DNA of 64,000 bases. Origin: Stylophora pistillata. Taxonomy: Eukaryota. The position numbers were made by a program, and so were the translations under genes. Location: contig NW_019218625.1 of the NCBI RefSeq assembly GCF_002571385.2, forward strand, positions 1 to 64,000, in the 5' to 3' direction. Shown here one piece after another: positions 1 through 52,904 of this stretch (position 1 is its first letter; each line of letters starts with the position of its first letter). The notes beneath the pieces were generated by a model that worked only from the letters and a program-made list of their open reading frames with translations, was not told the origin of the DNA and did not search any database.

Positions 1-147
1 TTAGGAAAGCTTGATTTTTGTCTTTCCAAAAGCTAAATTGCATACTTGAGTGAAAAACTGTTATAGCGGCTAATATATCTTCTTTTGTTTGCTAAAACTA
101 AATTGCACTTTTAAGGTAATGACTACAATTCTTTTACAATCAACAAG

Positions 148-3100
148 GCATTTGTGAAACTCTGAGAAATCCCTCCAAGGGAAAAGTGCACGGGAAGAAT
201 CCTTCCGGCCGTTTCCTTGACGGAGATGTAGCAACGTTCTCTTGCGACAATGGTTATGACTTGTTTGGTAAAAAGAGAATTCGTTGCGTTGGCAAGAAAT
301 GGGACTCCACCGTACCTCAATGTAAAGGTGAGTGTATTTCGTACACATGCTGATGGATACGCGTCAATAGCTTTTCAGAGCGACTTCTGAAAATGGTTCG
401 CATGATGTTCATTTCAAGTTTAATAGCTTTATTTAAGGTAAAGAACAGGTCTATGCACCCATAGAACTGATTTAGAATGTAGAAAAATTCTGTTTCTTTC
501 AAATAAAAATTGTACTTAGATGAAAAAAACTCTATTCTCACTTCATCCACGAAAAAGACATACAGGAGCCACAAAGTTTCTTTCTTTTTAACTTTTAAAA
601 GGAAACCTATGAGAACTATCAGGTCATAGTTTCTAAAAAGATAGATCTTCCAGACATAAAATCGCATTTATTCCCACATACTGGTTTTAGGTAATACCTA
701 AAGACGCAGATTCATATTGGTTGACTCCTTATTTGCAGCTCGTTGCAGAGTTTCAAGAAGACCCGTTAACGGTTATGTCAAAATAGGCCCAAAAAACATA
801 GGGGAAATGATTAAGCATGGCGAAAATATCACCTACGGTTGCTTGGACTCTTACACCATTGAGGGAAGTAGTGCTCAAATATGTGACAATGGTCGATTGA
901 CAAATGCTGTTCCTAAATGCAAAGGTCTGTATCGATTTATTTTTGAAAACGAACTTAGCAAGCACTTACGGGACTTTGTTGGGTACAAAACACTTAAAAA
1001 CATTTGGTGCAAGAGAAAGCTTTCGAAATGTTTATAATAATCTACTAAAATCTTAGTGAAACTTGAAAATTGGCAGAACTTATGAACATAGTTGATAAAC
1101 TATGGCAATCGTTCACTGNNNNNNNNNNNNNNNNNNNNNNNNNNNNNNNNNNNNNNNNNNNNNNNNNNNNNNNNNNNNNNNNNNNNNNNNNNNNNNNNNN
1201 NNNNNNNNNNNNNNNNNNNNNNNNNNNNNNNNNNNNNNNNNNNNNNNNNNNNNNNNNNNNNNNNNNNNNNNNNNNNNNNNNNNNNNNNNNNNNNNNNNNN
1301 NNNNNNNNNNNNNNNNNNNNNNNNNNNNNNNNNNNNNNNNNNNNNNNNNNNNNNNNNNNNNNNNNNNNNNNNNNNNNNNNNNNNNNNNNNNNNNNNNNNN
1401 NNNNNNNNNNNNNNNNNNNNNNNNNNNNNNNNNNNNNNNNNNNNNNNNNNNNNNNNNNNNNNNNNNNNNNNNNNNNNNNNNNNNNNNNNNNNNNNNNNNN
1501 NNNNNNNNNNNNNNNNNNNNNNNNNNNNNNNNNNNNNNNNNNNNNNNNNNNNNNNNNNNNNNNNNNNNNNNNNNNNNNNNNNNNNNNNNNNNNNNNNNNN
1601 NNNNNNNNNNNNNNNNNNNNNNNNNNNNNNNNNNNNNNNNNNNNNNNNNNNNNNNNNNNNNNNNNNNNNNNNNNNNNNNNNNNNNNNNNNNNNNNNNNNN
1701 NNNNNNNNNNNNNNNNNNNNNNNNNNNNNNNNNNNNNNNNNNNNNNNNNNNNNNNNNNNNNNNNNNNNNNNNNNNNNNCCAATAGATCATGAGTAGGAAG
1801 CAATAAAATCGCGTGTGTAAATCGGTTTATTTATTTCTTACATGAACCTTACCTTCTAGATTATTCTCAATGTGGTGCAAGCCCAATACGGCTTCGAGCA
1901 CGAACACGACGAATGGTTGGTGGTAAAAACTCAAAAAAAGGGTGGTGGCCCTGGATGATTGGACTACGCAGACTGAACAGCAAAAGTAATTTAACAAACG
2001 AAATTTTATCTTTTTAAATCTTTTTTTAACTTACAATTGAAACCGACTGTATAAAAGCCTTCATCGACTTTGTGAAGACTAAAATTAGATTATAATCAAT
2101 TTCGCCCCGGTTACAGTAAAAGAAAGATTTTCTCAATTTTTCTTGTGGCAAATAGAGAACGATTCACCGTGTATTTATCCCTCTTGCATTCTCTTCACAC
2201 CCTCTTTCCAAATATACAGCTAATATATACCCACCAAAAACTCCCTATTTCACTGACGAACTCTGAGTTTATAGCCAGGATTTTTTTTCATACTATTTCG
2301 TGTCTCATTAGAACATGTTTTCTGATATACACTTACTCTTTGCACTCACACTAAATTTTCAAGCTTTTGAAAAAAATACTTTTACAATGAGAACTTTATT
2401 AAGATATTTACCATTGAGACTGAAACATATTTTTTTTTTTTATTTCTGTTCACCTTCCGTTTCTTAGTGGAAAATGTACTTATCTGTGGAGGTGCTCTGA
2501 TTTCTCGTCGCTGGGTTCTGACAGCTGCACATTGTTTTTACCACCAAAATTTTCTGGGGGCTCGTGTTCTCGACGATTTATCCAATAAGTAAGCACTAAG
2601 TCCCTTAACTTTTTTACGTTTTGAAGTTTTAAATAACCATTTTATATCTATAGATATCATTTTTTATTACATTATTTAAAATTTCTTATCTAAAGAGAGA
2701 GAAAATTGTGCGAAAAGAAAGGTTTTCGAATTTCTGATCCTTCACAAGGAATAACTCTCGAAAAACTTTCAAAACCAGCCGTTCCTTAATTAGTGAAGCA
2801 AACCTGGCTCTTTGACACGCAGGTACCACGTGACAGTGGGTGACCACCACTTGCAGAGAGTTGAAAAGTCTCAGATGGAAGTGGAGGTGGAGAAGATATT
2901 TGTTCATCGAGATTACATTGATACCAAGCTCACAAATAACATCGCTCTTGTGAAACTTCACCAAAAAGTGGAACTTGGTCGCTTTGTACAGACATTGTGT
3001 ATTCCGGAAAAGGATGATGGTGATTCGGCAATCCCTAGAAAATTCGGCATAGCAACAGGTTGGGGTGTAACACAGGCCTTGAAACTTGGAGAAAATCCCA

Positions 3101-3429
3101 AAGAAGAAAAACGCTACTCAGCCCGTCTTCAATACTCAGCCTTCACAATTCAAAGCGACCAACTCTGCGCTAACAAGTCAGTGCCGTACTTTTTTAACTC
3201 TACGGTGACGTTCTGTGCTGGGGATGGAAAGGGAGGAAATGATACTTGCCATGGCGACAGTGGAGGAGCTTTCGTCCGTGAGGTAAAAAGAGGAGACAAC
3301 TTCCGTTGGGTGGCTTCTGGGCTGGTCAGCTGGGGAGTGGGCTGCGCACAAAAGGATCAGTACGGATACTATACCAGGGTGTATCCATTTATTGATTGGA
3401 TAAAGAAAACTATGAGAGATAACTCTTAG
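148..3429 (+). CDS. Gene A: 3' part of a secreted CCP(sushi)-containing trypsin-family protease homologue, paralogous to the factor B-like protease domain; catalytic Asp replaced by Asn; 5' end outside the window
   Basis: Exons 148-327 (CCP, ICETLRNP...WDSTVPQCK), 739-924 (CCP), gap 1119-1778, 1860-1985 (CGASPIRLRARTRRMVGG...WPWM), 2468-2588 (LICGGALISRRWVLTAAHC), 2823-3429 (NNIAL...DTCHGDSGG...SWGVGC, stop). All have AG/GT boundaries with compatible phases. Confidence 0.85.
1119..1778. other. Assembly gap (660 N)
   Basis: Run of N. Confidence 1.
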
Positions 3430-5085: not shown

Positions 5086-5120
<35 letters not shown>

Positions 5121-6249: not shown

Positions 6250-8088
6250 ATGCTAAAGAAATACCAGTCCCTTGCATGCTTCTTATATATTTCGGTGGTG
6301 TACGTGTCTTTGGGATATGCTGGTAAGTAGTAAGTTTAATTCCAAAGCTATTACTGCTACGAGCTGGGAAATCGTTAGGTTTCAGTCTTACTGACCTATG
6401 GAAAATCCTGCTTAGCATGAATAATTATAGAGAAATTCATGAGGTGGGTTACCAGTCTGTGATTTAGTGAATATTCCTCTTCATAGCAGTCACAAAGGAA
6501 CATCAGATGTATGTATCTAATGTGTTTCATTTTGCGTTTCTAACTGGTCCATGTTTCGGAAGACTTTTAGACATATTTGTGACTCTTCATGTACTCAAAC
6601 ATGAAAGCACAAGCACTAGACACATTATTAATTTATATTGGGGAAGGAAATTAAGCGTCACGCACGTTCGATAACGTAACTTGCGTTGACCTTTACCAAA
6701 TGAAAGAGACCTTTGGTAAAACATTACATTTAAAGACCATAATCTCAAGGCAATCTGCCGTTTACGACATGATCTTAATCGTCTTTCAGACTGCGGCGAT
6801 CAAGGCATTCCTTTACCTCCAACTTCACCACAAATCCGACAGTGCTTAACTGCTGGACCGGTATCGTATTTTTATCTCAGCTTCCCCATTGAATATGAGA
6901 TTACAGCGACGAAGATCTACATTTCAGAAAGCAAAGTTCAATGGATTGAATTGCAGGCGCTACTGTCAAATACGTATGTGAATCGTGATCATTTCAAGGT
7001 AACAGCTTGTTCAGTTGTACTTCTTTCCTTATACGCTCTTCGATTTTTTTTTTCCGGCCTAACTAAAAATCGAGATATCTATGTGAAATGATTGATGTTA
7101 ACTTTGCTCATGGAGTATTCGACTTTTTTTTCTTTTCAGCCACGACACGGTCCTGGGTCACAAGAGTTAGTACTTTCCAAACCAGTCATAACTAGGTCTT
7201 TACGAATTGTGCTGGGGAGACCCCACCAGACCCGCCCCACCCGAATTTGTTTTCTTGGGGTAGTGTATGGATGCGAGGCAACCCCTCAAGGTGAGAGTGT
7301 AGAAAGTTGTGGATAGTCAATTTGAATTAAGTTATTCGATTAAAAAAGCTTTAATAACTATGACGGAAGAAGAACGCTTTTGAGTTCAGATAACTTCTTC
7401 TCCACAAGCAATTTGTGAAAAGCTTCTTTTACAATGAAATGTTAATATTTATGAAATAGTCACCATAGGAGATGAAGCACATTATTATCTATTGTTAAAC
7501 TTTTTTTTTGGTTGTATCTTATCATCATATTAGACCATGTAGGTCATACATAATTCTAATCCTACAGTGTTTTCTCTAACACCTTTCCCGCCTTTTCGCC
7601 CAAAAGCACAGTGCTAAGCTTACATTATTGTATGATGAATGATATAATGCCTTTATTCAAGAAACTGCTCGTAAGATTTCATATCCGCTATTTGCATGCA
7701 ATTAATAAATATATTATTGTCTCGCCTTGTGTTTTATGTCCTTACCGTTTTAGGTTGTATTATGCCTGGCTCTCCAGTCCTCTTCAAAGATGGAGGGAAA
7801 TACTTGAAAGGGCGATTTTCGTTGACCACGAGGCGTTCCGGATGGGAGATTGTTTATGGAGAGAAATTCATCTATAATAACAAAAATATCATTCTTGATG
7901 AGAAACCACCAAGCGTGCTCCTTGAGGGAACTGCAGTCGTTGGGAAAGATTCGGAAGGGAACTTAAGAGAGGGAAAAGCAAAACAAATGTGCTTGTATCC
8001 AAATCAATGCACGGTCGAGACCAACGGTGTAGAATGGCAAAGTAAGTTCGATGACGTCAGGCTTTTGACGGGAAAACTGTGTAAATAA
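6250..8088 (+). CDS. Gene S1: secreted protein (~255 aa), signal peptide + divergent discoidin/FA58C-like domain + Cys-bracketed tandem-Tudor-like module
   Basis: Exons 6250-6322 (MLKKYQSLACFLYISVVYVSLGYA), 6790-6998, 7140-7290 (PVITRSLRI...VYGC, like a discoidin C-terminus), 7754-8088 (CIMPGSPVLF...VRLLTGKLCK*). Open frame across GT-AG joins. Confidence 0.8.
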
Positions 8089-9185: not shown

Positions 9186-10786
9186 ATGAAATGGGTCAAG
9201 TTGATTACAAGGAAGTCAAAGGAAATGAACTTGTATGCTGCTTGTGTCGTTTACTATTTAGTGGTTGACTCTATTTCGGATTTATTGGTAAATAGCGGCT
9301 CCTGTTGTATGAATAGGATTTTAACAAATTTCAAATAATTCTGAAAAACACCCACGTAAAGGTAGAATACATTGTATAGGTGACAGCATGACTGGCAAGC
9401 CGGTAACATTGCAAAATACCACCTACAGGTCATACCATTATTTATTTTATAATAGAAACCGAGAAACCTTCGGTAACGCACAAGAGACCTTCATTTCCTC
9501 GGGTTGAAGAAACAAACACAGGCGTCTGCATTCGTACAACCTGTTCTCTCCTTTTTCCTTCACCGTGTTGTCATGGTAACCTTACTATACCATCCATCCA
9601 TGTTATACGACTGTTACACTAAAATAGTGATACTTTCAACCGATCAAATCTCTTCTGCGGCAACCAAATTATAGTCGATACTCTGAACGTATTGCAAATT
9701 AAATATCTTTTCACAAGAAAAGGCGGAAATATGAAATCTTTTATGATATTTTCGCCAACAGATTGACACAATTTAGATTTTTAGCTCACATCACTGCCTA
9801 GTTTGACATTAGCGAGATGATCAAAATATAAACATTTAAATAGAAGTTTACGCAAACTTAGAACTCAAACTGCGCTGATTAAGAAAGACATTTGTCATAC
9901 CTGTTCAAATGTGCCATGGTGACTTGTTCTTGTAATGGAACCAAATTCCTTTATTACATGTTGTAGGTAGAGTGTCAGCTATTGAGGTTATTATCTCCTC
10001 CTCTCATTCGGAAACATGGTCATCAATTCTTATTTAGAGTCAAAAGTCATCTTGTCTGACGAGAGTTAACGCGCTTTCCTACAAAGTTTCTTCGCACTAT
10101 CTTAGTCGTCGGTGAAGCATTACACAGTAGGAATAGATAATAATGTTCCCAAATGGTATAGTGAAGGCCATATTTGTACACCAAGTCAATCCCTTGGAAT
10201 TTGACCTTCTTTCTTATCTGAATGCTTTCCTTTGTGTAGTAAACTTACTCACTGGCCTATTTAAATCCTACAACATCTCTCATAATATCATATTACTCTT
10301 TCCCCCCTCCCCTCCCTTATTAACCAAACGTTTCCTCGATTCCGATTTCCATGCGATGAATACATGGGCCCAAAATGTGGAAAAAAAAAGGTGATGTAAA
10401 ATACTGTGGGACATGCAGCGTGTATGACGGGAAAAGAAAAGTGAAAAGTGTCCCTCAGCCGCTGACTACAACAAACCAAAGTTGGGCCAAATGCTTTGAT
10501 TCATCACCACTCTTGCGATAAGTTTGGAATGCAAAGTAAACGAATCCCAAACGAGAGTATTACAGCATCATCTTCAAAACGGACAGGTAACTCCTCTGAC
10601 CTTAATTAGGCGTTTGGACGGCCCAAGAGCCGTTTACTTTGCGCCAAATGACAAATTTTCTTACAAACAATCCAGCTGAAAGAAACAAAAATTATAACAA
10701 CTCAAAGAGAGCTCTTCTCATTGGGCATAGGTGACAAAATATGGAGTCATTTCCAGGAAAATGGAACATGGAAAGGATACAATAAG
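9186..10786 (+). pseudogene. Gene L1: truncated pseudogene copy of gene L2 (signal exon + first FA58C exon)
   Basis: 9186-9287 matches the L2 signal exon but is 1 nt shorter. ~10520-10786 matches L2 exon 19074-19360 with the acceptor lost, stops and indels. Downstream exons are absent; intron-like similarity to L2 continues to ~12390. Confidence 0.8.
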
Positions 10787-10949
10787 GTTCCCTTATTTAC
10801 AAATGTTTGGTTTTCTTATTTTTTATTTGGTCGTATTGTATCAAGATAGCTAATTTAACATATCTTCCTTTTTATACGTTCATGTACGAGGGGAATATAC
10901 GAGAGTCAATTGATATTTTTTTTTCAAAATGAATAAAGGGGGTAATTCT

Positions 10950-11125
10950 CTAAAGAAACTGTGGTGCTGCGTCGTTGGGGTAACAAAGTAACTTGGTTAT
11001 ATCAACTAAGTTGAACTTGTAAATTAGTCACCGCTCTGAAGAAGGGCTAAAGCACTAAACGTCAACTTTTTAACTCTTCACGGTGTCCAATTAACAATTT
11101 CAACTTAGTTTATGTAACCAAATTT
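10950..11125. mobile_element. Copy of the palindromic hammerhead-core repeat
   Basis: ctgaagaagggctaaagcactaaacgtc core with the same arms as 4890-5142. Absent at the equivalent position of L2 (~19505). Confidence 0.65.
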
Positions 11126-26872: not shown

Positions 26873-27299
26873 CTGAAAAGGAGAAAGTAGACAGATATAA
26901 ATTAATTAGTAATCTCCACTAATACATTTATATATATATATATATATATATAGTCGTTAATGGAACTCTCAGGCCAACAAAGATGCACCTTATATATATT
27001 TAGTATAATTTCAAAGCTGAACAAAGAGTTTCCCGCAATCTCATTGGTCGAGCGGTTCCTTATATGACGCTATATAAACCGCACCGCTCCGCGCGGTTTA
27101 TATAAAATGTTAAACTAAAATGTTAATAAATGTTACTAAAATGTTATGATTTTAGAAATTTTTCTGTTGTTCGCTCTGAAATTATACTAAAACAATTATT
27201 CGCCTCAGGTTCGGTGAATATTGTCGAATAATCACCTCGACTTCGTCTCGGGGAGTATTCGACGATATTCGCCTCGCCTTCGGCGAACAATTTTTAAAT

Positions 27300-40400: not shown

Positions 40401-42616
40401 ATAATTAATCATTTAGTTGGATTAGTTCGATCAAATGGCTCTAATTTATCCAAACCGAAGCGAGTCAACCCGCGGGACTTCACCTGAACACTTGGGTGTT
40501 TTGCTTGCGATCCACTTTCCATTCTTGCAAGTTCTTATGTCAGTTCCTTTTCGGCAAACGTATCTTGCCTTACAATAACCAGTGTGTATAGCCACTCTGG
40601 ATTTTGGAGGCGGATTTTTTTGGGCTTCACGGAGAATATCAATGCATTTCTTGTCACATTCTAACACAAGAAGAAACAATGTAACTTGAAAGCAAGCATA
40701 TGCCCAGTAAGGTAACATCTTTTATGTAGACAGTTAGATATACTTGACTTGGATTTACTCGCGTAGGTGAGATATGTTATAGGTTTCACCGACCCTAAAT
40801 ATTCAATCTTATCTTTGGGATTTCAAGTTAATTAAACTCATCTTCTGCAAGTGTTCATGAACCGAAATTAGAACTCGCTTCTGTTTACAACCCAGGGTAA
40901 AATCTTACGAAAGGCCAAATAAAGTCTCCCGCCGGTTTGATGTCAGCTGATGCATAAATACGCCCGTTTCTCCTACATAAAATTTCTTTTTAAAAGGAAT
41001 GATTGCAGTTTTGTTAGTAAGCCTCTGTTCGCTATTAGTTTGACGTTAGGACCTACTTATATTAAGCTTTTTACTATAAAATAAAACTATACAGAGATTC
41101 CCAAAAGAGACTGGGACAATAGAAAACAACTTCATTAACTGATGGTTTGTTAACTCTGAATTCAAGGGGTAAACGCTTGAACTTCCGTAAAACTTACTAC
41201 TTTTTCGGCTCATTACATTTTGAGTGGCCAACACCAGTGCAGTCAAAAACACGTACCATAGAATCTAGGAAATAAGAGAAAAGTTCAGTTTCTTTCCAGT
41301 CAATATTTCTAAGCTAAACAAGTGCTTAAAACTCAAGTGCGCGGTAAATTTAGTCATTTTCTCCTCTTTTAGCAGATTAGTTGATATCCAGAGGATCCTC
41401 GCAAATTTGAGGCCAATTTTGTGGCTAGCTCTGTCGAAGGGCTAACGCTTCAAACGTCAGTTTTGGAAAACTTTTTAACGGCGGCCATTTACGTTATCAA
41501 CTCAGTTAATAATACCATAATTGTATTTATTTAATAGTTGTATTTATCGTGTTTGCGATATTTTTGGAACATATTCCTGATTGATTGAATGGTGTTCTAT
41601 GGGAACTCCTTTAATCAAAGATAACTTCATTTAATTTTGAATTGTATGCAGAATGAAAGTTATCCTTTTAACTTAAGTGGGTGTTTGTTTTGAATGATAA
41701 CTTCTCCTTAAAAGATCAGTGCATAATTCAGCGCACGAGTGATGAGAACTGATGAAAAGAGAATTAGCTCTACTCTTTCAGTGTGTTTCTTTGATTAAAG
41801 CCAAAATTCTTCAAACCAGCTTTTAGAGGAAGTGTATAGGAACTCTGTGGGAGAATCAATCTAAATTAACTCGACTATCTTGGTGATAATTATTACATTG
41901 TGAACAGCCTCCATGGTAAAGAATTTTATATGACTGACACCCTCGTATACCTTTCCAACGCCTTTATAGGGTACATACATTTAATAGACTCAAGCCTAAG
42001 CTTTTAAACATGCAGGTATAGGAGTATTTCAAGGAATAATTTTTGTCGCCTTTACTTTCCTTGCTGAAGGAAGAATCTTCCTTTTTAGCTTAGAGAAGGT
42101 TAAAGGTTAGCCAATGTTTTTCACAATACATAGAAACTCTTTGCTTTAACTAATAGCAAAATTTCTGATCGTATAATTAGATACTAAAACTTTTATTTTT
42201 GTCCAGTTTCGATTAAATTGGCATCATCGGAATATGATGAGAGTATTGACTTTTATTGATTAACACTGCTTGCTCTTTGCTGACGTTAAACGTCCCCCAT
42301 CATGAAGATGATTAGTCGGATTAGTAATAACGTTACGTCCTTTTGTTGTTCTGTGCAGTGGCACTAGTCGTTCCATATCACTGAATCTTAATTTATGATA
42401 GTATAATGATAGTTGCGAGGCTTCTTCGCATACTTTTTAATTATCAGGGCTTTTAGAGTAAAAATCTCCTTTAACCCGATGATCGAAACACCCCGTCAAG
42501 ATTAATTAATATTGGTTGATCCAGCACGTATATTTTTCCCTTTTAGTCCTTTCAGCTTTACTTGCGTTGCAGTGTAGAGTAAATTAACATCTTACCTGAT
42601 ATCGAAAAAATAGCAT
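31449..42616 (-). CDS. CFB: Complement factor B/C2-like protease (~910 aa): signal peptide, 6 CCP (the first divergent), vWA with MIDAS, trypsin domain with intact triad
   Basis: 14 exons: 42616-42596, 41264-41198, 40660-40484, 39401-39231, 38231-38064, 37795-37610, 37004-36819, 35689-35516, 35365-35074 (FRGRAINL...LDLVFVIDASSSV), 34192-33882 (GGAT...FITDG), 33414-33280, 32997-32881 (LRARMVGG), 32443-32323 (TAAHC), 32055-31449 (SDIAL, DTCHGDSGG). 2733 nt, open frame. The symbol denotes family, not proven orthology. Confidence 0.9.
35748..36620. repeat. Degenerate (GACT)n microsatellite field interrupted by a SINE
   Basis: Many GACT/ACTG tetramers; (TATG)n at ~36430-36482. Confidence 0.85.
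36178..36482 (+). mobile_element. 5'-truncated tRNA-derived SINE with a (TATG)n tail
   Basis: Body (cccggccggaccaa...ggtcttaaaataa...cccgtctcctgca...ggagacgttaattt) is shared with 50307-50530. Confidence 0.7.
39650..40385 (+). mobile_element. Penelope-like retroelement fragment (GIY-YIG) in a factor B-like intron
   Basis: VVYQFSCAGCNSRYIGETSRHFSTRIKEH...LKLKEAFYINKIKPELNKQ; degenerate hammerhead-like tgaaggtggcataagcatgccgaaac at ~40335-40359; 39650-39749 repeats 39882-39981. Confidence 0.85.
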
Positions 42617-43495
42617 CTTGCTCTGTTTGGAGATTTAACTCTAGATAATGCTCAGAGCTTAGTGCATTCGAAGATATCTCTTTTCTGTTTCCGCTATTCG
42701 CTAGCGTGTCGAGATTGTTAATTCTTTCAGGATATTTTTACCGTCTGAGCGCTGCCTAAACACAAATGAACGGTTGCCAAAGAAAACAGTGTGCGCGCTC
42801 ATTCAGAGCTTGCTGTCAATTTAAGCAGCTACAGTTTCAGCGGATGTTGAGGTCGTATATTGAGAAGTTTCAGGAAAAGGTCTGGGAAGTTATTTTCTTC
42901 CTGTGACAAAAAACATATTTTCTTCGCTTTATTGCGCCATCATTTCCGTCACTTTCGATGAAAACTGTTACATCTGCCATAGTTTCCTACTTGGTTAAGA
43001 CGGTAAACTCTTTATGATAAATGAAATAAAGAAACATTGGAAATATACACAGTTGAGTGTAAAATTTAATATGACGGTTGGCCGACTTAACTGGTCTGAT
43101 TGGTAACACCACATTGCTCAATTCTGATAAAAAGATAAACAGCAGGGGTTGGATGACCTCCAAATACACAGACCTTTTGATGAAATGAAAATGACAGCGC
43201 AGTTTCAGCTATAGTGATTTGGCTCACGTAGGGAAAATTCTGCACTAAAATAACACTTTGATGACAGATTTGTTCTCGTTTCCTGCCCTTGGTATCCTGA
43301 GAATAACAGCGCTCAAAATGAAGGAATCAAAAGATAACGTTACCGTTGACAGCTTGTCCGAATTAGTGTGCTGAAAGGAAAAATAATTTGGCACGTTCTT
43401 GCGTGTTTCTCATTTAATTCCTTTGCGTCTAAAACGCAGAAGCAATACCTTCAAAATACATTTCGTTTTCGTAAACACAGCGTACGGTGAAAACC
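42617..43495. promoter_or_regulatory. Probable bidirectional promoter/5'UTR region between head-to-head genes
   Basis: Only ~880 bp separate the divergent ATGs at 42616(-) and 43496(+). Confidence 0.55.
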
Positions 43496-46400
43496 ATGCG
43501 TTGCGTTGTAAGCTTTATTTTCGGTCTCTTTCTGCTCCAGCTGGCAAGAGGCGAAGAGAATAAATCAGGTAAGTCATTGTGTGCTGGGCGGTAAAACTGA
43601 TTATCTCTATTTCAAGTTTAATAAGTTTAGCAACGGGTATTTGTCATGCAACCATTGTAGATGAATAAAAGAGAAAAAAAAAGGGTGCAGAGACAAAAGA
43701 TGACGGCCATTGAGATTTCGGTTTGAAATTTTGATTACGTTGTGGTATTTACTTAATTCTATGTATCAGTGAACTAAGTGTTGAACGTAACCGGACCTGT
43801 TAAAAATGTTCCTGCGAGATAAGTTTACCTTCCTTTTTTTTCTACGAAAATCCTTGTGTTCGAGCAACTTAGATACCGTGTTGTGTGGGGTGCCGCAAAC
43901 TGAGGCAACCCTTTTAGTCGTGGGGTGAGGAAAAATATGCTTTCCCCAGGGGAGAGCTCTCCAATAACAAAATAGCCCAAGCAGTGGTATGTTAGATTTG
44001 TTCCAATTTCAGCGGGGTGCTTAGGGTAGCAAGGATAGCACAGGAAGTGAATCGGATCATGTAACGCAATAGCCGCTTGCTCGCTCGCTCCCGCGTTCGC
44101 GCGTGGTTATCGCGATCGTACATGACCAACGAGTAATTAGTTACACAGACACGCCGTTTGCGATTATAATATTGATTATTTAAATGTCCTGTCACCTTGA
44201 GCCGAGTCATTCTCTTGACAACAGCAATTATATTGTTTAATTGGTATTCGACGGTACAAATACTCTACTTACTCCTTATTTTGGGCTCAATAAAGAATTG
44301 CACAGCTCAAGATGATGATCTTTTTTTTTTTTTTTGATTATAGTCAAGAAATGCCTTGCCCTAGAAGCTCCGGAAAATGCTGAAGCAATTGGCAATAACA
44401 CAGTTGGTTCTGTTGTCAAATTCTTGTGGAAAAAGGGCTTTTTTCGACTTGGAAGTCCTCACAGAATCAGGTGTAAGTCAAATGGACAATGGACTAAGCC
44501 TAATGTGTCTTGTGTTGGTGAGTACTGATAAAATGTTACTTTCATATATCATGGCTACGACTGTCCTTATGACTTTTTTGTAGCGTGTGTACAATACCAT
44601 CAATCCGTGAATCTTTCCCTTTCTTGTAGTTGCTTGTTTTCTTTTCGTGGTTTCTGTTCGGTAAAGTTGTTTTATTTTGCTGATTTTGTCGCATTATTTC
44701 CCCTAAATGATATACAGTCGTTACCCATGTTTCACTTAGTAATGTTGACGATCCTTTTTTTTGCTCACATTTTGTTTATTTTAATTTAGTCATCGGATCG
44801 TTTTCCTTTTCAGCTGTAAGTTGTGGAGACCCTGGCTCTCCCTTGAATGGAAAACGCATGGGTTGGATATTTCAGTACAATCACAGTGTCACTTTCGATT
44901 GCCATCGCGGTTTTAAACTGGAGGGACCTAAAACAAGAACCTGCCTTGAGAACCAAACCTGGAGTGCCAGCCAGCCAGTTTGCAAACGTAAGATTAGAAC
45001 ATGAAGCAAGATTTTCCCATGTGTTTTAAAAATATAGCTTACAGTTAAAACAAATGATCATGCTCCCGTAGCAATGAAGTCTCTTGCGTAACGAACAGAA
45101 TAAACGATTCCACCCATGATGGTAAAATGGATGATGCAACAAAGAGAGAACCGAGTCCCATTATGTCCTCATAATGAAACAAAACCCAACTTAAATAAAC
45201 GAACCCCCGTTACGCCGAATTAGTTTCCCGCCCTTTAGCACTTCTTCATACGTACCTGGGTGTGCTTATTTTCGGGTTATTGTGGAATCCCCACAAAACG
45301 AATCCCTGACCATAGAGCGTAACCATCTAACCCGATAAAATGAATCCTTTTTTTCGTCCTCGACAACATAGTAGAAGTAAAATAAATGGAATAGTATTGC
45401 GTGAAAACGATCCAACGTTATGACAGAGACCTTTTTTGATCGAAATATTTTAGCTGTTCCATGTGAGGAGCCTCCAAAAGTGGTTGATGCGGTGATGTTA
45501 AGCGGTGGTTTCGTGTTTGGTGCACCCGTGTATTACACTTGTAGTGAAGGGTATAAATTGCAAGGACCAGACACGTTGGCATGTGGAGAAGATGGAAAAT
45601 GGGTCGGTGAGACTCCGGTTTGTAAAGGTGAGTTTCTTGGTTGACTTTCGTTTCATACTTTTATTTTCACTCTACGTAGACGAAGCACGAAGTAAAATGA
45701 AATGGCCAGCTGCTTTCAAAATATTCCGCTCACAAAAAAAATTAACTTTGACAACAATAATCAAACATCAAAAGTGAGACATATTTGTGTCGAACAATAA
45801 ATTCTCGACTTACCGTAACTCAGCGCATGAAATAACCAACCCCAACAAACAACAGCAACAAATGCCCACAGGGAGTGGCGGTGTAGCCGAATGGTTAGGG
45901 CACTAGACTCGTTGTTCCGGGCTCAAGCACTACACCCTGCTACTTACTGGATTTGTTCTCATTTGCCCCAAGTGCAACTACCTGGCTGCACCTTGTAGAG
46001 AACCAACTGGTCTCTCCTCTGCCATTTAGGAGTTTTCAACACTGGGTTTATTTGCAATGTTTGTTTCCATATTTTTTTCTTGGGAAGAGAAGAGTGATTA
46101 GGTAGCAGTCGATTAAGGCCATTGCTTATTATTATTAATTTTGTCGCTATCATTATTGCCATTACTATCATTATCATTAGTAAGTGTTATTACAATGAGA
46201 TTTACCTCCTTTTGCATTCCCCTTTTAGCCATAACGTGTGCTGATCCGGGTACACCCCAACACGGTTCAAGAAATACAACCGGCCCTCCATTCAGTCATA
46301 TGTCGTTAATCTTCTACGAATGCAGTAATGGATACATTTTGTATGGAACTGACAGGCGCTCTTGTAATGGTGACGGGGAGTGGACTGGGGTACAACCGTT

Positions 46401-49400
46401 TTGTGTTGGTAAATAAGTAAAGAGCTCTGCGCCTTCGATTAATGTTAAAGTGCACCTAAACCCAAAAAATTTTTTTCGCTTAACGAAATAAGCGTATTTT
46501 TTGGAGTATTTCTGTACAAAAAATATTTTATTTGCCCAGATCTTCAATTTTCTGTGCCCAGTCAACATGATACGAAAAAATCGGCCGCCATCTTGCTCCA
46601 CGACCGAGTTTAGAGAGGAATGGCTCTAGCGGGTAATGTGTCGTCAAATCGAGAACGCGAAAGTCTGCATTTCACACATTTTCACTTGTATGGGAAGGTT
46701 GTAGTCGATATTTTCCGAAAATATGCCGACTAAGTGTGTTGCAGGAGGATGTAGCAAAGTGCGAAATTTGGAAGAGGGTATCGCGCTTCATACATTCCTC
46801 ATACAACACACCTAGTCGGCATATTTCGGACAATATCGACGACAACCTTCCCAAACAAGTGAAAATGTGTGAAATGCAGACTTTCATGATCTCGATTTGA
46901 CGTCACATTACCCGCTAGAACCATTCTTCTTTAAACTCGGTCGTGAGCCAAGATGGCGGCCGATTTTCCGTATTTTGACTGGGCACACAAAATTAAAGAT
47001 TTGAGCAAATAAAAACATTTTTGCAAATAAATGCTCCAAAAAATAAGTTTATTTCGCTAAGCGAAAAAAAAATTTGGGGTTTCGGTGCACTTAAATGATA
47101 ACTGGATGAAACAACATTTTTTTCGCTTTTTTTATACCTAATGGTGACAATCAGTTTCTTCCCCTACAATCATTGCGCTGTTTTAGTGCTTCTTTCGCTT
47201 TCCCTTCCTCACCGCTAACGACTATTCTCCATTTTATCCTGTTTTCACTCCTCTTCAATCCACTGTCCTTCAATCTTCTTTCCATTTTCTCTCACTTACT
47301 TTTTTCAAGCTGCCTCTCTCTTAACTTCTCAGCTTCAACTTATTAAAGCTGATTGTCATCAGCACGTTGTTGAGAGGAAAAGGCGAATTTAAATACTCGA
47401 GTGTGTTATTTTTCATTCATATATTTTTTATTCTATAGAATGCGCAGGTGTTAACACGCCGGTTTTCGTCAGGAATGGGCAACGTTTCATCCACGGAATA
47501 ATTCAGCAAAAAAGCAAAAATATCGTGACGGTTCTGACTGACTCACCTAAAGAAGAAAGAGATGTTGTGATATTTGGACCTGGAACACAGCATTACATCA
47601 TAGTGGAGGACAAACTCCCATCCTCGAAGAACGTCTTCTTGGGATCGCGTGTGATTGCAATGCAAAGAGGATCGTACATCTTTGCTAAGGTTGACGCGAT
47701 CAATGGTGACAAGTATTCGGTAACATTTGAGGACAGACAGCGAACTAAGCGGACAGTGGCATTAGAGCATATCCGCAACTTGTTTCCTCCAACATTCTGT
47801 GGTACGTAAGTCATGGTGCCTTTAATTAAGCTAAGAAGTGTACTGAAGGGTTGAGGAAATCTTTAGTAGCTACCTTAAACAAAATCTGTCTGGATCATAC
47901 GGTCAATCTGCTCAGCTCAACCTTCCCTACTATCTTATGGAAATGGCCACTACTTTCTTGTGTATCCTAACGGTAAAAAGCCTTACATAGCCTCACCCAA
48001 ATAAGGACATGCTCCTTCTGGTTTGACCGCATCTTAAGAAGAAACTTTCCTATGGCTGTTACGTACCCCTATCAAACAGCACACCGCCTTGATATATTGA
48101 CGTGAGCCACAAATGGAGCCTTTAAGACTTTGGATTAGCCCAACTAACAGTCGCCGTTCTATAAATAGAGCCAAGCTTCTTGGAAATTAACTTTTGGAAG
48201 CACGATTATCAAAGTCTAGGTTTAAATCTATAGATTTTAGAAATCTTGGAAAAAAATAAAAATTTGCACCCAATCTAAGACAGTTTTCTGACATTACACT
48301 GTTAATTTAAACCAATTAAGCAACATGTCCAGACCCTGGAAAACCAGACAAAGGCTTTCGAACAGACAACTTAGAGGAGTTCATAGTAAGGACCGAAGTA
48401 GAATTTGGTTGTGAAATAAATACCCAGCTGCTTGGATCAAGTAAGAGAACATGTCAACCAAATGGAAGATGGTCTGGAGAACAACCGACCTGCGAAAGTA
48501 AGTGTAAAATGATATTTATCAAAATGCATATTATTGAGAGAAAGAAACGAAAACCGCCCTGCAGGTGTCAGTGTTAAGTAAGAGGGATTCGCGTGAGGAA
48601 AAAAAATTCAAAGTACAGACAAACTTTCACCAAAAACTCGACGTCTTAGCGTCATTATGACACAGCTATATCGAGAATGAGGATTAGTCAAAGACAGAGC
48701 TGTGAAGACTTAATAGAGTTGGTAGTTAATAAGAGTCGGAAATATTTTATCTTGATTAATAAATGATCATCGCCTTTCCACCGCCTCGATTCGCCTCTGC
48801 TATTAGCTGTTAATTTGAGAGTCTTTTGTATTTATTTATTTAGTTATTTACTGGCTATGGTTTCTGTGAGCATCTAAAGATCAGACCTTATGAACGTAAG
48901 GTACCGAACAAAGACCCTGGCACAAATGGAGTCAGTTTGCACGCTTAGACACGGGCCTAACCTGTAACGATGCCTTTTTATTTCAGTTAGTCTGAATTTA
49001 AACGTGCATATCAAGATGTAATTTTTAGATGCATGAATAAAAAAAAAAAAAATGTTGCATCTATTTGCCAATAGTTACTTCTTGCTGGGATCTCGATGTC
49101 TTTCCTCCCAAAAACGGCAAACGAATTGGTGATGACTTTTCTATTGGAAGCACCGTAGCCTTTTCCTGTGATGAGGGATATGAGCTTGACGGAGAATCGA
49201 AGCTGACATGTCGTCCGGATGGTCAGTGGTCTGACAGAACGCCTTTGTGTAAAGGTATGACAAAGCAGAACCCCTTCTTTGCTTCAGCCCGTGTTAAAAA
49301 TCAATAACTTTTTTTTACTTTCAATTTCCAACCAGATTCTCAATGGATCGATGTCCGCCAGTTCTTTTACTATCAGCTATTTGAATTTTCTATTCTTTCT

Positions 49401-52400
49401 TTTTGTTTGTTTGTTTGTTTGAGGAGGGAGGAGGGGTAGCCATCGCAATTCTCGGTGATCACTGCAACGTCAACGGGTGACCTCTATATGCTTTTCACGA
49501 CTATGTCCATTATCAACCCCCCCCCTCCCCCCCGCCTTCTTGCATTATTTGGGAATTTGATTAAGGGGGCACGCGTTTGCCTTGGTGTCTAACAAGCTTC
49601 TTTTTCTCTTCCCCCGCCACTTTGACACTTACCTTAAAATGTTCCTGTTTTAATCATTGTTATAGAATATATGTGCAATTTGCCACAAGATTGTGTGTGA
49701 ACGATTACCTAGATATGGAAATTGCAAATTTTACAGATCGCTGCGAGGGCGTGGTTTGTAAACTTGAAGAGAAGTGTGTTTATAACAGCCTCCAAGGGCC
49801 CAGATGCGTCTGCCGTAATAACGTGGACTGTCCTGCCGATTTACAACCCATATGTGGTTCTGATGCGAAAACCTATAACAATTACTGCATTATGAAGGCG
49901 ACTGCTTGTCGAGAAGGCAAGGAGGTGGAGAAGGTCGCAGATAACTCATGTTCTCCTGGTATGTCTTCTTTCGTCTTGCTTCTTCTTTTTTTTTTTTTGA
50001 GGTTTCTTAATGCGTAGGCGACTATCATTCCCTAAAGCTGATGCTGGCTGAATAAAAAAACCCATAACTAATGCGCTTTTCTTTCTTAAGTTGTTTGTTT
50101 GTTTGTTTGTTTGTTTAAAGAAAAAAACATGTAACCTATGCACTAAGGTACTTGTACGTTACATGATCCTTTAGAATGGTTGTGGCAAAAAACAGTGATA
50201 ATAGATAACGGGGCAATCATCATGTTAATTTGGAATGTTGTGGGTAGTTTATTTCTGAAACTCCAGTCATTGTAACAGGTCAAAAACTAATGACAGATTA
50301 TTAACCGCCTCCCGGTTAGCATAATGGATAGAGCGCTGGACTGTTGTGCGGGAGGTCGAGGGTTCGAGCCCCGGCCGGACCAACACTCAGGGTCTTAAAA
50401 TAATTTAGAAGAATTTGCTGCCTTTCTATAACATCAAGAAATGGTTAGATATTCTAGTTTTCTCGGATAGGGACGAATAAATGGAGGTCCCGTCTCCTGC
50501 AAGGTTGGAGTAGGAGACGTTAATTTACAGGGCCATGTATTAGAAAACTGGTTACTGGGTTAATCATGTATTTACCCTCTTAAAATAAAGAACATTGTAT
50601 TGTATTGTATTGTATTGTATTGTATTGTATTAATCTGACGTGTTAACTCTACTTCTAAAATCAGGAGGAATTTGTCAGATAAACCCTGCAAGCAAATGCA
50701 GGGCTTACTTCAGAAATTTCTATTTCAACGTGACAAGCAATGTGTGTGAGCCAATCATTGCAGGTGGTTGTCACCCAAGTGGATGGAATGGTTTCCCTAC
50801 CATGGAAGACTGCAACCGTACTTGTTCTGGTAGGTGGAGTCTACAACATAACTAATTAAAGATTTTCGATCTTTGGGTTCAGGGACCGTTATTATTTATG
50901 GCCGGGAGGGGAAAGTGGGGCTGCTGGAGGATATTGGTTGTGTAACGATAAAATTTACTCGATCCACCTAAGGTTCTGTAACTTCCTTATGATCATCTCC
51001 CCCACCTCTTTCTTTGGAGTTAATTGGCAGTCGACTTTCTATAGTCCACCCATTACGCTCTGTTGACGACGACTGATCCCCGGCCCCTCCGTCCCTCCTG
51101 TAAACCATGTGATCCCCAAAATCTTCCACCAACCCCTCCCTCTCCCCACAGGGGATAAAGAATGCCTGGTCCTTAATTGCTTTTTGAGTTGTCATTGTTC
51201 GACTCGAGAAAAGAGCACTAAAAAATTGCTGAATGGTTTTTCAGTACAATTGTACTGCAAATGAATCGCTCTAAGTTACTATTTGATTTATTCAATGCTT
51301 TCAGTGGACGTATGTAGCCAGCCTACTGAACCAGGTCCGTGTACTAACACCACACATCGGTGGGCATTTAGCCCCAAAGCTGGTCGTTGTAAACGATTCA
51401 ACTATGGAGGCTGTTTTGGCAACGAAAATAACTTTGACAGCAAGGACAAATGCAATAAACGTTGTCCTCCTGTAAATACTGGTAAGGTGTTCCTCCCATT
51501 TGGTATTTTTGTCCCTCGTGATATTTGGACTGCTTCTCTCTTTTCCTTAGTGTGGTTTGTCGAAGTCAAGCAATGTAGTAGAATTTCCTGAGCCGAGCAC
51601 GAGCGAAATAGAAGGCCGTGATAGGCTGCGTAGTAATTAATCTTCTGCGCAAACGGGAAAAGCATGGTGGTGAGAAGAGTGTATTGAACAGGAGTCACGC
51701 GTACTTGTGATTTCAAATCGAACTCGAGCTGTGCGCTCGTTCAATTTTGAAATCATGTGTATGATTTCAGACCAAATTGCACTCCGCTCAGCGCAACCTA
51801 ACTATCATTGAGGTAAAACAGGCACTTGAGAAACCTTGCAGTATTTATTTTTTATTTTTTTTTTAATTACTGAGCATGATGAAATAATGCTGGTTTTTCT
51901 TAGATCGAGGGAACAAAGCCTGTCCAAGATGCGTTCAAAAGAGACTTCGTGAGGCATGCAAATCCAGTAGTATTGGTGAGTTGGCTTGTTGTCGACGAAC
52001 GCTTTCCATAGAATTAAATATTGATAAAAGTAAACTAAAAATTATAGCAATGATGATGATAATAATAAAACGAAAACCCCTTTGTCTCTGTATTTGGTCG
52101 CTGTAAAGGTCCCAAGCAGCCAGTTTCATTTTCACAAAAGCTCGCCGAAACCCTTTACGGTGGAGCTCCTTAACCCATAACAGCAAAACATGTTAAACAG
52201 AATCCCGGTCGCTAGACTGATAAAGTGCTCTCACTCATGATCATTTATTTTTTCTGTCTGGGCTGCGCTGCGAAACGTGCATTGGTCAACACCATCGAAC
52301 AAACTTACCTAGTTACCACTCTCTTAAATATTGATGTTTGTAGCAAGGTGTTTGGTAGGAATAAGATGACTGGAAGGATTAAGTTCGCTAAATTTCGGTG

Positions 52401-52904
52401 AGGAACCCATGTATAGTACGTTTATTACCCAGAGATTGCGACCACAACAAGAATAGATACTGATGGTCTTAGGGTCGACCATGTGCTGAAATTTTGCCTC
52501 GCGTGTTGTTTCCTTTCTCTTGTGTCTAAACTTTTTCTAAACAATTGTCTTTATTCGCAGCATTTGTAGGCAAAGTCGATAAGAAGTTGCCACATGATTC
52601 AGTCAAGAAACAAGCTCGTTATCAGGTCGTGATAAAGAACGTTCTCAGGAATACAGAGGGCTTTCCTACATTGGGAAGTGTTGTCGTCAATGTCCCTTAC
52701 AGTAGGTCACCAGACTGCCCCTGCCCTTCGCTACCCCAAGAAACGTTCTTTCTGATGGGAAATGTCGTGGTTGAACCAAAAGGCAACAATGCAAAAGTTG
52801 GCATAACAGTCACAAAGCCTGCAGTTGTGCAAAAATGGAGCCAAGAGATCCTTCAGAAAATGAATAAAAAATGCAAAGATTTGGATTATCGTGAACTACT
52901 CTAA
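43496..52904 (+). CDS. Gene W: secreted mosaic protein (~824 aa), signal peptide, 4 CCP, tandem-Tudor-like module, 2 CCP, follistatin/Kazal, 2 Kunitz, NTR (WFIKKN-like C-terminal half)
   Basis: 13 exons, all introns phase 1: 43496-43568, 44344-44517, 44814-44987, 45454-45627, 46229-46408, 47439-47801, 48321-48497, 49075-49254, 49737-49958 (10-Cys follistatin, PICGSDAKTYNNYC), 50665-50829 (Kunitz), 51305-51481 (Kunitz, FNYGGCFGNENNF), 51904-51975, 52561-52904 (NTR, CPRC...AC...AFVGKV...CPCP...W). 2475 nt, open frame. Confidence 0.88.
45872..46115 (+). mobile_element. Degenerate tRNA-derived SINE
   Basis: Head ggcggtgtagccgaatggttagggcactagactc is A-box-like and followed by a non-tRNA body. 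Confidence 0.5.
46449..47091. mobile_element. Kolobok-type fold-back MITE carrying the start of a THAP domain
   Basis: Preceded by TTAA; ~290-bp inverted arms (agtgcacctaaaccc... / ...ggggtttcggtgcact). The centre from 46723 reads MPTKCVAGGCSKVRNLEEGIALHTF. Confidence 0.75.
50307..50530 (+). mobile_element. tRNA-derived SINE followed by (ATTGT)n
   Basis: A box tagcataatgg and B box ggttcgagccc, then the same body as 36178-36330. Confidence 0.75.

What the first reader, a model, noticed from the sequence alone, without database searches (positions are those of the whole stretch)
148..52904. Linked complement-like cluster: factor B-like protease, head-to-head multidomain inhibitor, discoidin proteins and a pseudo-protease
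Seen: every host gene in 53 kb encodes an apparently secreted mosaic protein, and they are cross-linked by shared parts. Gene A and the Bf-like gene share a near-identical protease domain; S1, S2, L2 and W share an unfamiliar module; L2, W, A and Bf share CCPs. Known: CCP-vWA-trypsin is the factor B/C2 architecture, discoidin domains bind glycans or lipids, and Kunitz/Kazal domains inhibit serine proteases. Inference: this is a co-evolving recognition-activation-regulation cassette (innate immunity, symbiosis or allorecognition), with birth-and-death turnover shown by three pseudogenes.
Basis: partly seen in the sequence, partly recalled or inferred. Interest (0 to 1): 0.85.

Follow-up and report, generated by a model that had tools for sequence, protein, structure and literature searches.

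The report
Coral factor B with conserved partner genes
A stony-coral complement factor B gene sits back-to-back with a secreted multi-domain candidate protease inhibitor, a pairing kept from corals to a sea anemone, which gives a testable candidate for how the oldest complement systems are held in check.

Summary
The observation largely holds. Pfam confirms a factor B gene (six CCP, vWA, trypsin). It also confirms a divergently transcribed secreted gene (four CCP, tandem Tudor-like domain, two CCP, follistatin/Kazal, two Kunitz, NTR). A discoidin-CCP gene, two short secreted paralogues (S1, S2) and three frame-broken copies are also present.

RNA reads splice across the first assembly gap in frame, so Gene A (CCP-CCP-protease, catalytic Asp replaced by Asn) is a real transcript without a vWA domain.

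New here: the inhibitor/factor B head-to-head pair, with start codons 0.9-1.4 kb apart, is conserved in Pocillopora, Acropora and the sea anemone Actinia. The discoidin gene lies tail-to-tail with factor B in both coral lineages.

- The pair is absent beside Nematostella factor B.
- It is absent beside this genome's second factor B paralogue.
- Gene A, the S1/S2 duplication and the pseudogenes are not seen in the part of the Pocillopora locus I could read.
- The inhibitor's middle domain models as a tandem Tudor/Agenet fold.

A conserved core trio with lineage-specific turnover is supported. Functional coupling, with the partner regulating factor B, remains an inference. Co-expression and binding were not tested.

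The parts
145..3429 (+). Gene A: at least two CCP exons plus a Bf-derived serine-protease domain with no vWA domain. The catalytic Asp is replaced by Asn; His and Ser are kept. Exons: about 145-325, 737-922, 1858-1985, 2468-2588 and 2823-3429. The 5' end is lost at the start of the contig.
   Evidence: Pfam. Splice joints 325>737, 922>1858, 1985>2468 and 2588>2823 in RNA runs, all in frame by coordinate arithmetic. Triad alignment. The window is the start of contig C837.
1119..1778 (.). Assembly gap 1, inside a Gene A intron. It is bridged by RNA and its true length is about 465 bases.
   Evidence: Joint 922>1858 and a 756-base contig covering 903-1118 and 1779-1853.
6250..8088 (+). S1: a four-exon gene of 255 codons (6250-6322, 6790-6998, 7140-7290, 7754-8088). 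It encodes a signal peptide, a discoidin-like domain with no Pfam hit, and the C-terminal 4-Cys module.
   Evidence: Canonical splice sites and matching phases read from the sequence. Paralogy with S2 and L2. No RNA evidence was obtained.
9698..12000 (+). Broken copy of the 5' part of L2. The discoidin exon remnants at about 10360-10846 lie in several frames.
   Evidence: Self-comparison. DNA match to the Pocillopora L2 orthologue. tblastn with P0167.
12624..14577 (+). S2: tandem paralogue of S1 (12624-12696, 13124-13341, 13639-13786, 14243-14577), 257 codons.
19055..23445 (+). L2: discoidin (19061-19360, 20195-20371), CCP (21021-21245), a second discoidin-like domain (22035-22340, 22622-22777) and the C-terminal module (23093-23445). 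The 5' exon was not found. Gap 2 (22800-22934) lies in the last intron.
   Evidence: Pfam. tblastn with the Pocillopora orthologue P0167. No match to its signal-peptide and laminin-G exons.
25885..26918 (-). Protease pseudogene: a copy of only the last two Bf exons, with frameshifts and stops.
   Evidence: (1 TGA, 1 TAG, 1 TAA inside).
28479..29201 (+). W: broken duplicate of the last two L2 exons. The module has a frameshift after its first 10-15 codons.
31449..42616 (-). Factor B (Bf): signal peptide (42616-42596, 41264-41196), a CCP-like exon, five CCPs, vWA with a D-x-S-x-S MIDAS motif, and a trypsin domain with an R|MVGG site and an intact His/Asp/Ser triad. The mRNA is present in poly(A) RNA runs.
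   Evidence: Pfam. tblastn with the Pocillopora Bf proteins P0181 and P0199. Closest single-protease relatives are Nematostella and Exaiptasia factor B. Triad. RNA runs hold about 0.30 of the locus words.
42617..43495 (.). An 879-base spacer between the two divergent start codons; the presumed bidirectional promoter.
   Evidence: The spacer is 877 bases in Pocillopora, 1433 in Acropora and 929 in Actinia.
43496..52904 (+). Candidate inhibitor/regulator gene: signal peptide (43496-43568), four CCPs, a tandem Tudor/Agenet-like domain (47393-47806), two CCPs, follistatin/Kazal, Kunitz-1 (P1 Arg), Kunitz-2 (P1 Thr) and a C-terminal NTR.
   Evidence: Pfam. All exons are collinear in Pocillopora, where one 825-residue product is annotated. 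Structural model and fold search. Kunitz alignment to TFPI.
54154..60114 (+). Folliculin (FLCN): the unrelated flanking gene that marks the end of the cluster.
   Evidence: Pfam Folliculin, E 2.4e-17, at 59274-59501.

Best explanation
SHOWN
- The window holds the factor B (Bf) locus of a pocilloporid coral.
- Its conserved core is three genes:
  (1) Bf itself, with an intact MIDAS motif and catalytic triad.
  (2) A secreted mosaic protein transcribed from the opposite strand, with its start codon 879 bases from that of Bf. Its layout is four CCP, tandem Tudor-like domain, two CCP, follistatin/Kazal, two Kunitz, NTR.
  (3) A discoidin-CCP-discoidin-like protein ending in a diverged module, lying tail-to-tail with Bf.
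- Around this core the window's lineage made tandem segmental duplications. These gave S1 and S2, three broken copies, and Gene A. Gene A is an expressed chimera of CCP exons with a duplicated Bf protease domain that lacks the vWA domain and the catalytic Asp.

INFERRED
- The short, conserved head-to-head spacer works as a shared promoter, so Bf and its partner are made together.
- The partner restrains Bf, or the protease that activates it, in three possible ways:
  - Its CCP arrays bind the convertase components, as vertebrate RCA proteins do.
  - Kunitz-1, with P1 Arg, blocks a trypsin-type active site.
  - The C-terminal NTR domain competes for the Bf vWA metal site that C3b engages through its own C-terminal NTR (C345C) domain.
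- The discoidin proteins would supply surface (glycan or lipid) binding.
For: - Domain content.
- Bf identity: the nearest single-protease relatives of the last exon are Nematostella factor B (53%) and Exaiptasia factor B2b. Full collinearity with Pocillopora 'complement factor B-like'.
- Conserved pair: Pocillopora, Acropora digitifera, Actinia tenebrosa. Spacers are 877, 1433 and 929 bases.
- The partner's Tudor-like exon is single-copy in this genome and 44-84% identical in the three other species, so these are orthologues.
- The discoidin gene is tail-to-tail with Bf in Pocillopora and Acropora.
- Both divergent genes start with signal peptides.
- Kunitz-1 aligns with P1 Arg on the P1 positions of TFPI Kunitz-1 and Kunitz-2, and this Arg is kept in Pocillopora.
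- A Kunitz domain inhibiting a complement protease has precedent: TFPI-derived inhibitors of MASP-2 (PMC6527154).
- That the C-terminal C345C domain of C3b binds the Bf vWA MIDAS is established knowledge from C3b-factor B crystal structures. I did not look this up here.
- Bf mRNA is present in poly(A) RNA runs from several studies.
Against: - The pair is not present beside the orthologous Nematostella Bf.
- It is not present beside this genome's second Bf paralogue, so Bf can exist without the neighbour.
- Kunitz-2 has P1 Thr and the Kazal loop has P1 Ala. Neither suits a trypsin-type enzyme (read by eye).
- No conserved non-coding motif was found in the spacer across distant species.
- Co-expression was not tested: the single reads call went to Gene A.
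- WFIKKN-type tails in vertebrates act mainly on growth factors, so the partner could have a target unrelated to complement.
Confidence: 0.45

Rival explanations
1. Conserved neighbours without direct interaction. The head-to-head pair is kept because the two genes share regulatory DNA or a cell type. The partner protein acts on other targets, such as matrix proteases or TGF-beta-type ligands as WFIKKN does, and not on Bf.
For: - The FS-Kunitz-Kunitz-NTR tail resembles WFIKKN.
- Only one of three inhibitor-type loops has a trypsin-type P1.
- Nematostella Bf and the second Bf paralogue lack the neighbour.
Against: - Six CCP modules, which typify complement regulators, together with a C-terminal NTR like that of C3, sit next to the one protease that binds that domain. 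That is a pointed coincidence.
- Adjacency is kept across the coral/anemone split.
Confidence: 0.35
2. There is no cassette. The cross-links between genes are by-products of local tandem duplication and exon shuffling among neighbouring mosaic genes, and most copies are on their way to decay.
For: - Three duplicated blocks explain nearly all the 'shared parts'.
- Three of the copies are already broken.
- Gene A's protease groups with this lineage's Bf rather than with Pocillopora's (UFBoot 92).
- Gene A has lost the catalytic Asp.
- L2 has no detectable 5' exon here.
- A similar CCP/module/protease neighbourhood exists on another contig.
Against: - The core trio predates these duplications by a long way.
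- S1 and S2 keep intact four-exon frames.
- Gene A is spliced in frame and expressed.
Confidence: 0.2

Closest known systems
Cnidarian complement factor B (Nematostella Bf, BAH22728.1; Exaiptasia Ap_Bf-2b, PMC4840205)
   Same: CCP array, vWA and trypsin architecture. These are the best sequence matches (46-53% in the protease exon), with the same type of several CCPs and no EGF domain.
   Different: This gene has six CCP-type exons, against four or five in the anemone Bf-2 genes. The genomic partners described here are not mentioned in that paper.
Vertebrate complement gene clusters: Bf/C2 in MHC class III and the RCA cluster of CCP regulators
   Same: Physical linkage of complement proteases or CCP regulators, with tandem duplication and pseudogenes.
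   Different: In vertebrates Bf is linked to its paralogue C2, not to its regulators, and the RCA genes lie elsewhere. Here a CCP-bearing candidate regulator shares a promoter region with Bf.
WFIKKN1/2 (WAP, follistatin/Kazal, Ig, Kunitz, Kunitz, NTR)
   Same: The same order of follistatin/Kazal, two Kunitz and a C-terminal NTR.
   Different: No WAP and no Ig domain was found. Six CCPs and a tandem Tudor-like domain precede the tail. It is not a family member.
TFPI and other multi-Kunitz inhibitors
   Same: Kunitz-1 has six Cys and P1 Arg followed by Ala. It aligns with TFPI Kunitz-1 and Kunitz-2.
   Different: Kunitz-2 has P1 Thr. The domains are embedded in a roughly 830-residue mosaic. No activity is known.
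C345C (NTR) domain of C3/C4/C5
   Same: An NTR domain placed at the very C-terminus of a secreted protein, the position from which C3b engages the Bf vWA metal site.
   Different: No sequence match to solved C345C structures. Only the Pfam NTR family is matched, at E 3e-6.
Tandem Tudor/Agenet domains (BAHCC1, FMRP, plant AGDP, SETDB1)
   Same: The predicted fold of the partner's middle domain matches them (Foldseek E about 2e-5, TM 0.5-0.6).
   Different: Those are nuclear readers of methylated histones. This domain is extracellular, closed by a Cys pair and flanked by CCPs. Sequence identity is 11-21%.

Membership tests
Complement factor B / C2 | N-terminal CCP modules, a vWA domain and a C-terminal trypsin-like domain in one polypeptide | tested here: met
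   Pfam on exons. All exons are collinear with the 910-residue Pocillopora factor B-like protein.
Complement factor B / C2 | MIDAS motif (D-x-S-x-S) in the vWA domain and a His/Asp/Ser catalytic triad | tested here: met
   D-A-S-S-S is read in the ORF at 35067-35435. His is in 32322-32480. Asp and Ser are in 31452-32078.
Complement factor B / C2 | Closest relatives are characterised factor B proteins | tested here: met
   Among single-protease hits, the best full-length ones are Nematostella factor B and Exaiptasia factor B2b.
Complement factor B / C2 | Forms a C3 convertase with C3b | not testable with these tools
   Needs biochemistry.
Factor B / C2 (applied to Gene A) | A vWA domain between the CCPs and the protease, and an active triad | tested here: not met
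   RNA splices CCP2 directly to the protease linker exon. The gap holds only about 465 bases. The catalytic Asp is replaced by Asn.
WFIKKN | WAP and Ig domains in addition to FS, two Kunitz and NTR | tested here: not met
   No WAP or Ig hit in any exon of the gene, nor in the annotated orthologues.
Kunitz/BPTI inhibitors | Six-Cys Kunitz fold with a basic P1 residue for trypsin-type targets | tested here: met
   Kunitz-1: Pfam E 9e-8, P1 Arg aligned to the TFPI P1 residues. Kunitz-2: Pfam E 2.3e-18, but P1 Thr.
Regulators of complement activation (RCA) | Contiguous CCP arrays | tested here: met
   Four plus two Pfam Sushi exons.
Regulators of complement activation (RCA) | Binding of C3b/C4b with decay-accelerating or cofactor activity | not testable with these tools
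Discoidin (F5/8 type C) | Match to the family profile | tested here: met
   L2 exon 19055-19366, E 3.5e-14.
Discoidin (applied to S1, S2 and the second L2 domain) | Match to the family profile | tested here: not met
   No Pfam hit even at E 10. Only a motif-level resemblance at the C-terminal end of the domain, read by eye.
Tandem Tudor/Agenet (partner's middle domain) | Two five-stranded barrels matching solved tandem Tudor structures | tested here: met
   AlphaFold2 pLDDT 73. Foldseek top hits are BAHCC1, FMRP, AGDP3 and SETDB1 at E 2e-5 to 1e-4. Weak Pfam Agenet hit.
Tandem Tudor/Agenet (S1/S2/L2 module) | Homology to the same domain family | tested here: inconclusive
   For: language-model look-alikes are Tudor/Agenet clusters at 0.89. 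The syntenic Acropora orthologue ends in a domain that matches the partner's Tudor-like domain (hhalign probability 95%, E 2e-8). Against: direct profile comparisons of the module are not significant, and its model is poor (pLDDT 47).

The most novel reading that the evidence does not exclude
The divergently transcribed CCP-Tudor-CCP-FS-Kunitz-Kunitz-NTR protein is a dedicated regulator of the cnidarian C3 convertase. It would have been co-regulated with factor B through a shared promoter since before corals and sea anemones split. It would combine an RCA-like CCP arm, a P1-Arg Kunitz block and a C3-like C-terminal NTR decoy for the Bf vWA metal site. That would be the first complement regulator identified outside the deuterostomes, and an unusual use of a Tudor-type fold outside the cell.
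Probability: 0.25. Interest if true: 0.85.

Novelty: new variant of a known kind. Interest (0 to 1): 0.62.

Why it matters
Cnidarians have C3, factor B and MASP. How they keep this self-damaging cascade in check is unknown: the papers I could search describe no regulators, and none mentions this neighbour.

A gene pair held head-to-head since before corals and sea anemones split offers a concrete candidate regulator. Simple experiments would test it: co-expression, inhibition and binding assays.

The locus also shows how new complement-like proteins arise by local duplication and exon capture. Gene A is a young, expressed factor B derivative without vWA or the catalytic Asp. A similar vWA-less derivative arose independently in Nematostella.

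Tried and rejected
- The structure model of the S1/S2/L2 module was too poor to search (pLDDT 47).
- Profile comparisons of that module with the partner's Tudor-like domain and with Pocillopora P0220 were not significant.
- The NTR exon found no solved relative by sequence.
- A k-mer search for conserved motifs in the divergent spacer across four species gave nothing above shuffled controls.
- The word-based homologue search with the module found only two fragments, because of its length filter.
- The Bf profile search was swamped by CCP proteins.
- Five context look-ups found no record, or gave no DNA.
- I could not obtain protein ids for the partner's orthologues. P1 conservation beyond pocilloporids, the Nematostella orthologue and FLCN linkage in other species therefore stayed untested.
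- A loose end at 924, where 34 reads run on into a CCP-like start, matched nothing in the assembly. It may be an exon inside a gap or come from a paralogue. I stopped there rather than reconstruct gap sequence.
Exons were searched one by one by reference, and reading frames across junctions were checked by coordinate arithmetic only.
- Allorecognition was considered and dropped: nothing here bears on polymorphism.
Full report
SETTING AND GAPS
The window is the first 64 kb of contig C837 of a 397.6-Mb assembly in 5,513 contigs. Its DNA, non-coding parts included, is 70-83% identical to a Pocillopora verrucosa chromosome segment, so the organism is a pocilloporid stony coral.

The window has two real gaps, at 1119-1778 and 22800-22934.
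- RNA runs show a GT..AG joint from 922 to 1858 in two assembled contigs, three reads of X21 and one read of X24.
- One 756-base contig also covers 903-1118 and 1779-1853. The two sides are therefore continuous. About 465 bases are missing rather than 660.
- I did not read or fill the missing letters.
- Gap 2 lies in the last intron of L2. The exons on either side are consecutive in the Pocillopora orthologue, and the flanking DNA is collinear with it.

WHAT IS ENCODED
I translated stop-free exon ORFs by reference and scanned them one by one.

On the minus strand, 31449-42616 is a factor B gene.
- It has a two-exon signal peptide, one CCP-like exon below the Pfam threshold, five Pfam Sushi exons, vWA exons with a D-A-S-S-S metal site, an R|MVGG site, and a trypsin domain with His, Asp and Ser in place.
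- Its last exon, searched against 1.84 billion proteins, has Nematostella factor B (53%), Exaiptasia factor B2b and unnamed CCP-vWA-trypsin proteins as its nearest single-protease full-length relatives.
- All its exons line up with Pocillopora 'complement factor B-like'.
- Poly(A) RNA runs from several studies hold about 0.30 of the sampled words of the 9.4-kb locus, which is about the exonic share.

On the plus strand, 43496-52904 encodes a signal peptide, four CCPs, a 120-residue domain without a Pfam family, two CCPs, a follistatin/Kazal module, two Kunitz domains and a C-terminal NTR domain.
- The two start codons are 879 bases apart.
- Folliculin follows at about 54-60 kb.

GENE A AND THE SHORT GENES
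Gene A's four observed junctions (325>737, 922>1858, 1985>2468, 2588>2823) are all in frame with the exon ORFs by coordinate arithmetic.
- It is a real, spliced plus-strand transcript of at least two CCPs joined to a protease domain.
- There is no room for a vWA domain in the gap.
- Its catalytic Asp is Asn, while His and Ser remain.
- Its 5' end lies beyond the contig start.
- Many reads over its CCP exons carry variant letters, and 34 reads of one run continue from 924 into a CCP-like sequence absent from the assembly.
- A 98% copy of bases 1-282 and an 87% copy of bases 1-1100 lie in CCP-array genes on contig C8. Part of the depth over the CCP exons therefore probably comes from paralogues.

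S1 and S2 each have four exons with canonical splice sites and matching phases. Each encodes a signal peptide, a discoidin-like domain that no Pfam model recognises, and a 110-residue 4-Cys module ending at the stop. I have no RNA evidence for them.

L2 carries a Pfam discoidin, a CCP, a second discoidin-like domain and the module. I found no 5' exon. The signal-peptide and laminin-G exons of its Pocillopora orthologue have no counterpart in the window.

DUPLICATION STRUCTURE
Self-comparison resolves the 'cross-links' into three events.
- The first is a tandem duplication of a unit made of an S gene plus the front of L. It gave S1 plus a frame-broken discoidin copy at about 9.7-12 kb, and then S2 plus L2.
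- The second is a duplication of the block 'last L2 exons to last two Bf exons'. It gave the protease pseudogene at 25885-26918, with three stops, and the broken W at 28479-29201.
- The third is the capture of the Bf protease exons by Gene A.

A DNA tree of the last protease exon groups Bf, the pseudogene and Gene A to the exclusion of Pocillopora Bf (UFBoot 92). A protein tree could not resolve this. Gene conversion could mimic the result. In the stretch of the Pocillopora locus that I could read, there is a single L2 copy next to Bf, and no protease pseudogene or W.

CONSERVED LINKAGE
- In Pocillopora verrucosa, an 825-residue product with Sushi, Kazal, Kunitz and NTR lies head-to-head with the 910-residue Bf, 877 bases away. 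The 686-residue discoidin protein lies tail-to-tail with Bf.
- Acropora digitifera belongs to the other major coral lineage (my own knowledge, not looked up here). There, a Sushi-Kazal-Kunitz product lies head-to-head with Bf (1433 bases), and a Sushi-discoidin product lies tail-to-tail.
- In the sea anemone Actinia tenebrosa, an 846-residue Sushi-Kazal-Kunitz-NTR product lies head-to-head with Bf (929 bases). The downstream gene differs.
- The partner's middle exon is single-copy in this genome and 84, 52 and 44% identical in the three species. These are therefore orthologues.

Against a strict requirement for the pairing:
- Nematostella Bf falls in a well-supported sea-anemone group with Actinia Bf. 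Yet it has unrelated neighbours.
- This genome's second full Bf paralogue, on contig C122, has neither partner within 20-30 kb.

THE UNFAMILIAR MODULE
- The partner's middle domain models with fair confidence (pLDDT 73) as two five-stranded barrels. It matches tandem Tudor/Agenet structures such as BAHCC1, FMRP, AGDP3 and SETDB1 (Foldseek E about 2e-5).
- The Acropora L2 orthologue ends in a domain homologous to it (hhalign probability 95%, E 2e-8).
- The pocilloporid S1/S2/L2 module sits at the same position. Its language-model look-alikes are Tudor/Agenet clusters (0.89). It aligns the same way each time.
- None of those comparisons is significant, however, and its own model is poor.
- I rate it about 70% likely to be a diverged member of the same extracellular Tudor-like family. 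If so, the partner gene shares this module with L2, S1 and S2.
- Other copies of the module lie on contigs C8 and C1178.

HOW IT MOST LIKELY WORKS
Shown:
- gene content and orientation;
- the age of the core trio;
- the youth of the extra copies.

Inferred:
- The short conserved spacer is a shared promoter.
- The partner restrains Bf or its activator.

Reasons for the inference:
- CCP arrays are the working parts of vertebrate complement regulators.
- Kunitz-1 has P1 Arg followed by Ala, aligned on the P1 residues of TFPI, and this is kept in Pocillopora.
- Kunitz domains can inhibit a complement protease (PMC6527154).
- The partner ends in an NTR domain, as C3 does. It is established that C3b engages the Bf vWA metal site through its C-terminal C345C domain.

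Reasons for caution:
- Kunitz-2 (P1 Thr) and the Kazal loop (P1 Ala) do not fit a trypsin-type target.
- The tail also resembles WFIKKN, which acts on growth factors.
- No co-expression or binding result was obtained.

KNOWN OR NEW
Cnidarian factor B is well described (PMC4840205). That paper does not discuss genomic neighbours or regulators. My four literature searches found no description of this partner gene or of the pairing. These searches cover open-access papers only, so absence is not proof.

I class the locus as a new variant of a known kind. It is a complement gene cluster, but one that links the protease to a candidate regulator through a divergent promoter, with an extracellular Tudor-like module.

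Noticed in passing
window 4800-5200: A short element with very high depth on both strands in all four RNA runs (contig depth up to about 28,000). It shows many inverted joints and loose ends, and a hairpin at 4925-5042 that stays far below the threshold of any Rfam family. It is probably an abundant inverted-repeat mobile element rather than a gene.
   Followed up: partly
window 17491-17696 and 18080-18294: Two arrays of a 22-base tandem repeat in opposite orientation flank an ORF at 17736-18371 that has no Pfam match. The 'Cys-rich' ORFs here are translations of the repeat. It looks like a mobile element sitting where the 5' exons of L2 would be expected.
   Followed up: partly
window 27825-28259 (-) and 39682-40200 (+): ORFs with GIY-YIG nuclease hits, one of them inside a Bf intron. 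A 92.6% copy of 40046-40207 lies on contig C8. These are mobile-element remnants, not host genes.
   Followed up: no
G000:C8:14000-125000: A second neighbourhood of similar mosaic parts: long CCP arrays with 87% and 98% copies of Gene A's CCP exons, a module copy at 98912-99268 (-), and protease exons at about 84228-84683 and 122939-123538. The 98% copy ends exactly at a C8 assembly gap.
   Followed up: partly
G000:C122:154446-165834 (-): A second complete factor B paralogue with the same CCP-vWA-protease layout, 47-67% identical to Pocillopora Bf. It has no Kunitz/NTR or discoidin neighbour within the 20-30 kb examined.
   Followed up: yes
L003 (Nematostella OW051992.1, 12.76-12.79 Mb): A Nematostella CCP-protease gene without vWA ('limulus clotting factor C-like') has a protease domain that groups with Nematostella Bf (92/94 support). 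It lies 1.07 Mb from Bf on the same chromosome. This looks like an independent origin of a Gene A-type derivative.
   Followed up: partly
L002:11331-11414 and 16407-16895 (Pocillopora): The Pocillopora L2 orthologue has a signal-peptide exon and a laminin-G exon (Pfam E 6e-5) that are absent from the window. The window's L2 may therefore be 5'-truncated or use another first exon.
   Followed up: partly
window 924 (loose end): In run X24, 34 reads continue from the end of Gene A's second CCP exon into a CCP-like start that is nowhere in the assembly. It is either an exon hidden in an assembly gap or the next exon of a close paralogue.
   Followed up: partly
window 42617-43495 and the matching spacers of L012 and L013: An 11-base word (TCCGCTGAAAC) is shared by the divergent spacers of the window, Pocillopora and Acropora but not Actinia. 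This is not above chance in shuffles.
   Followed up: partly
P0220 (Pocillopora, 1188 residues): A WAP plus 17-CCP protein ends in the same Tudor-like domain (weak BAHCC1-like Tudor hit). Extracellular Tudor-like ends on CCP proteins therefore seem to be a wider coral theme.
   Followed up: partly
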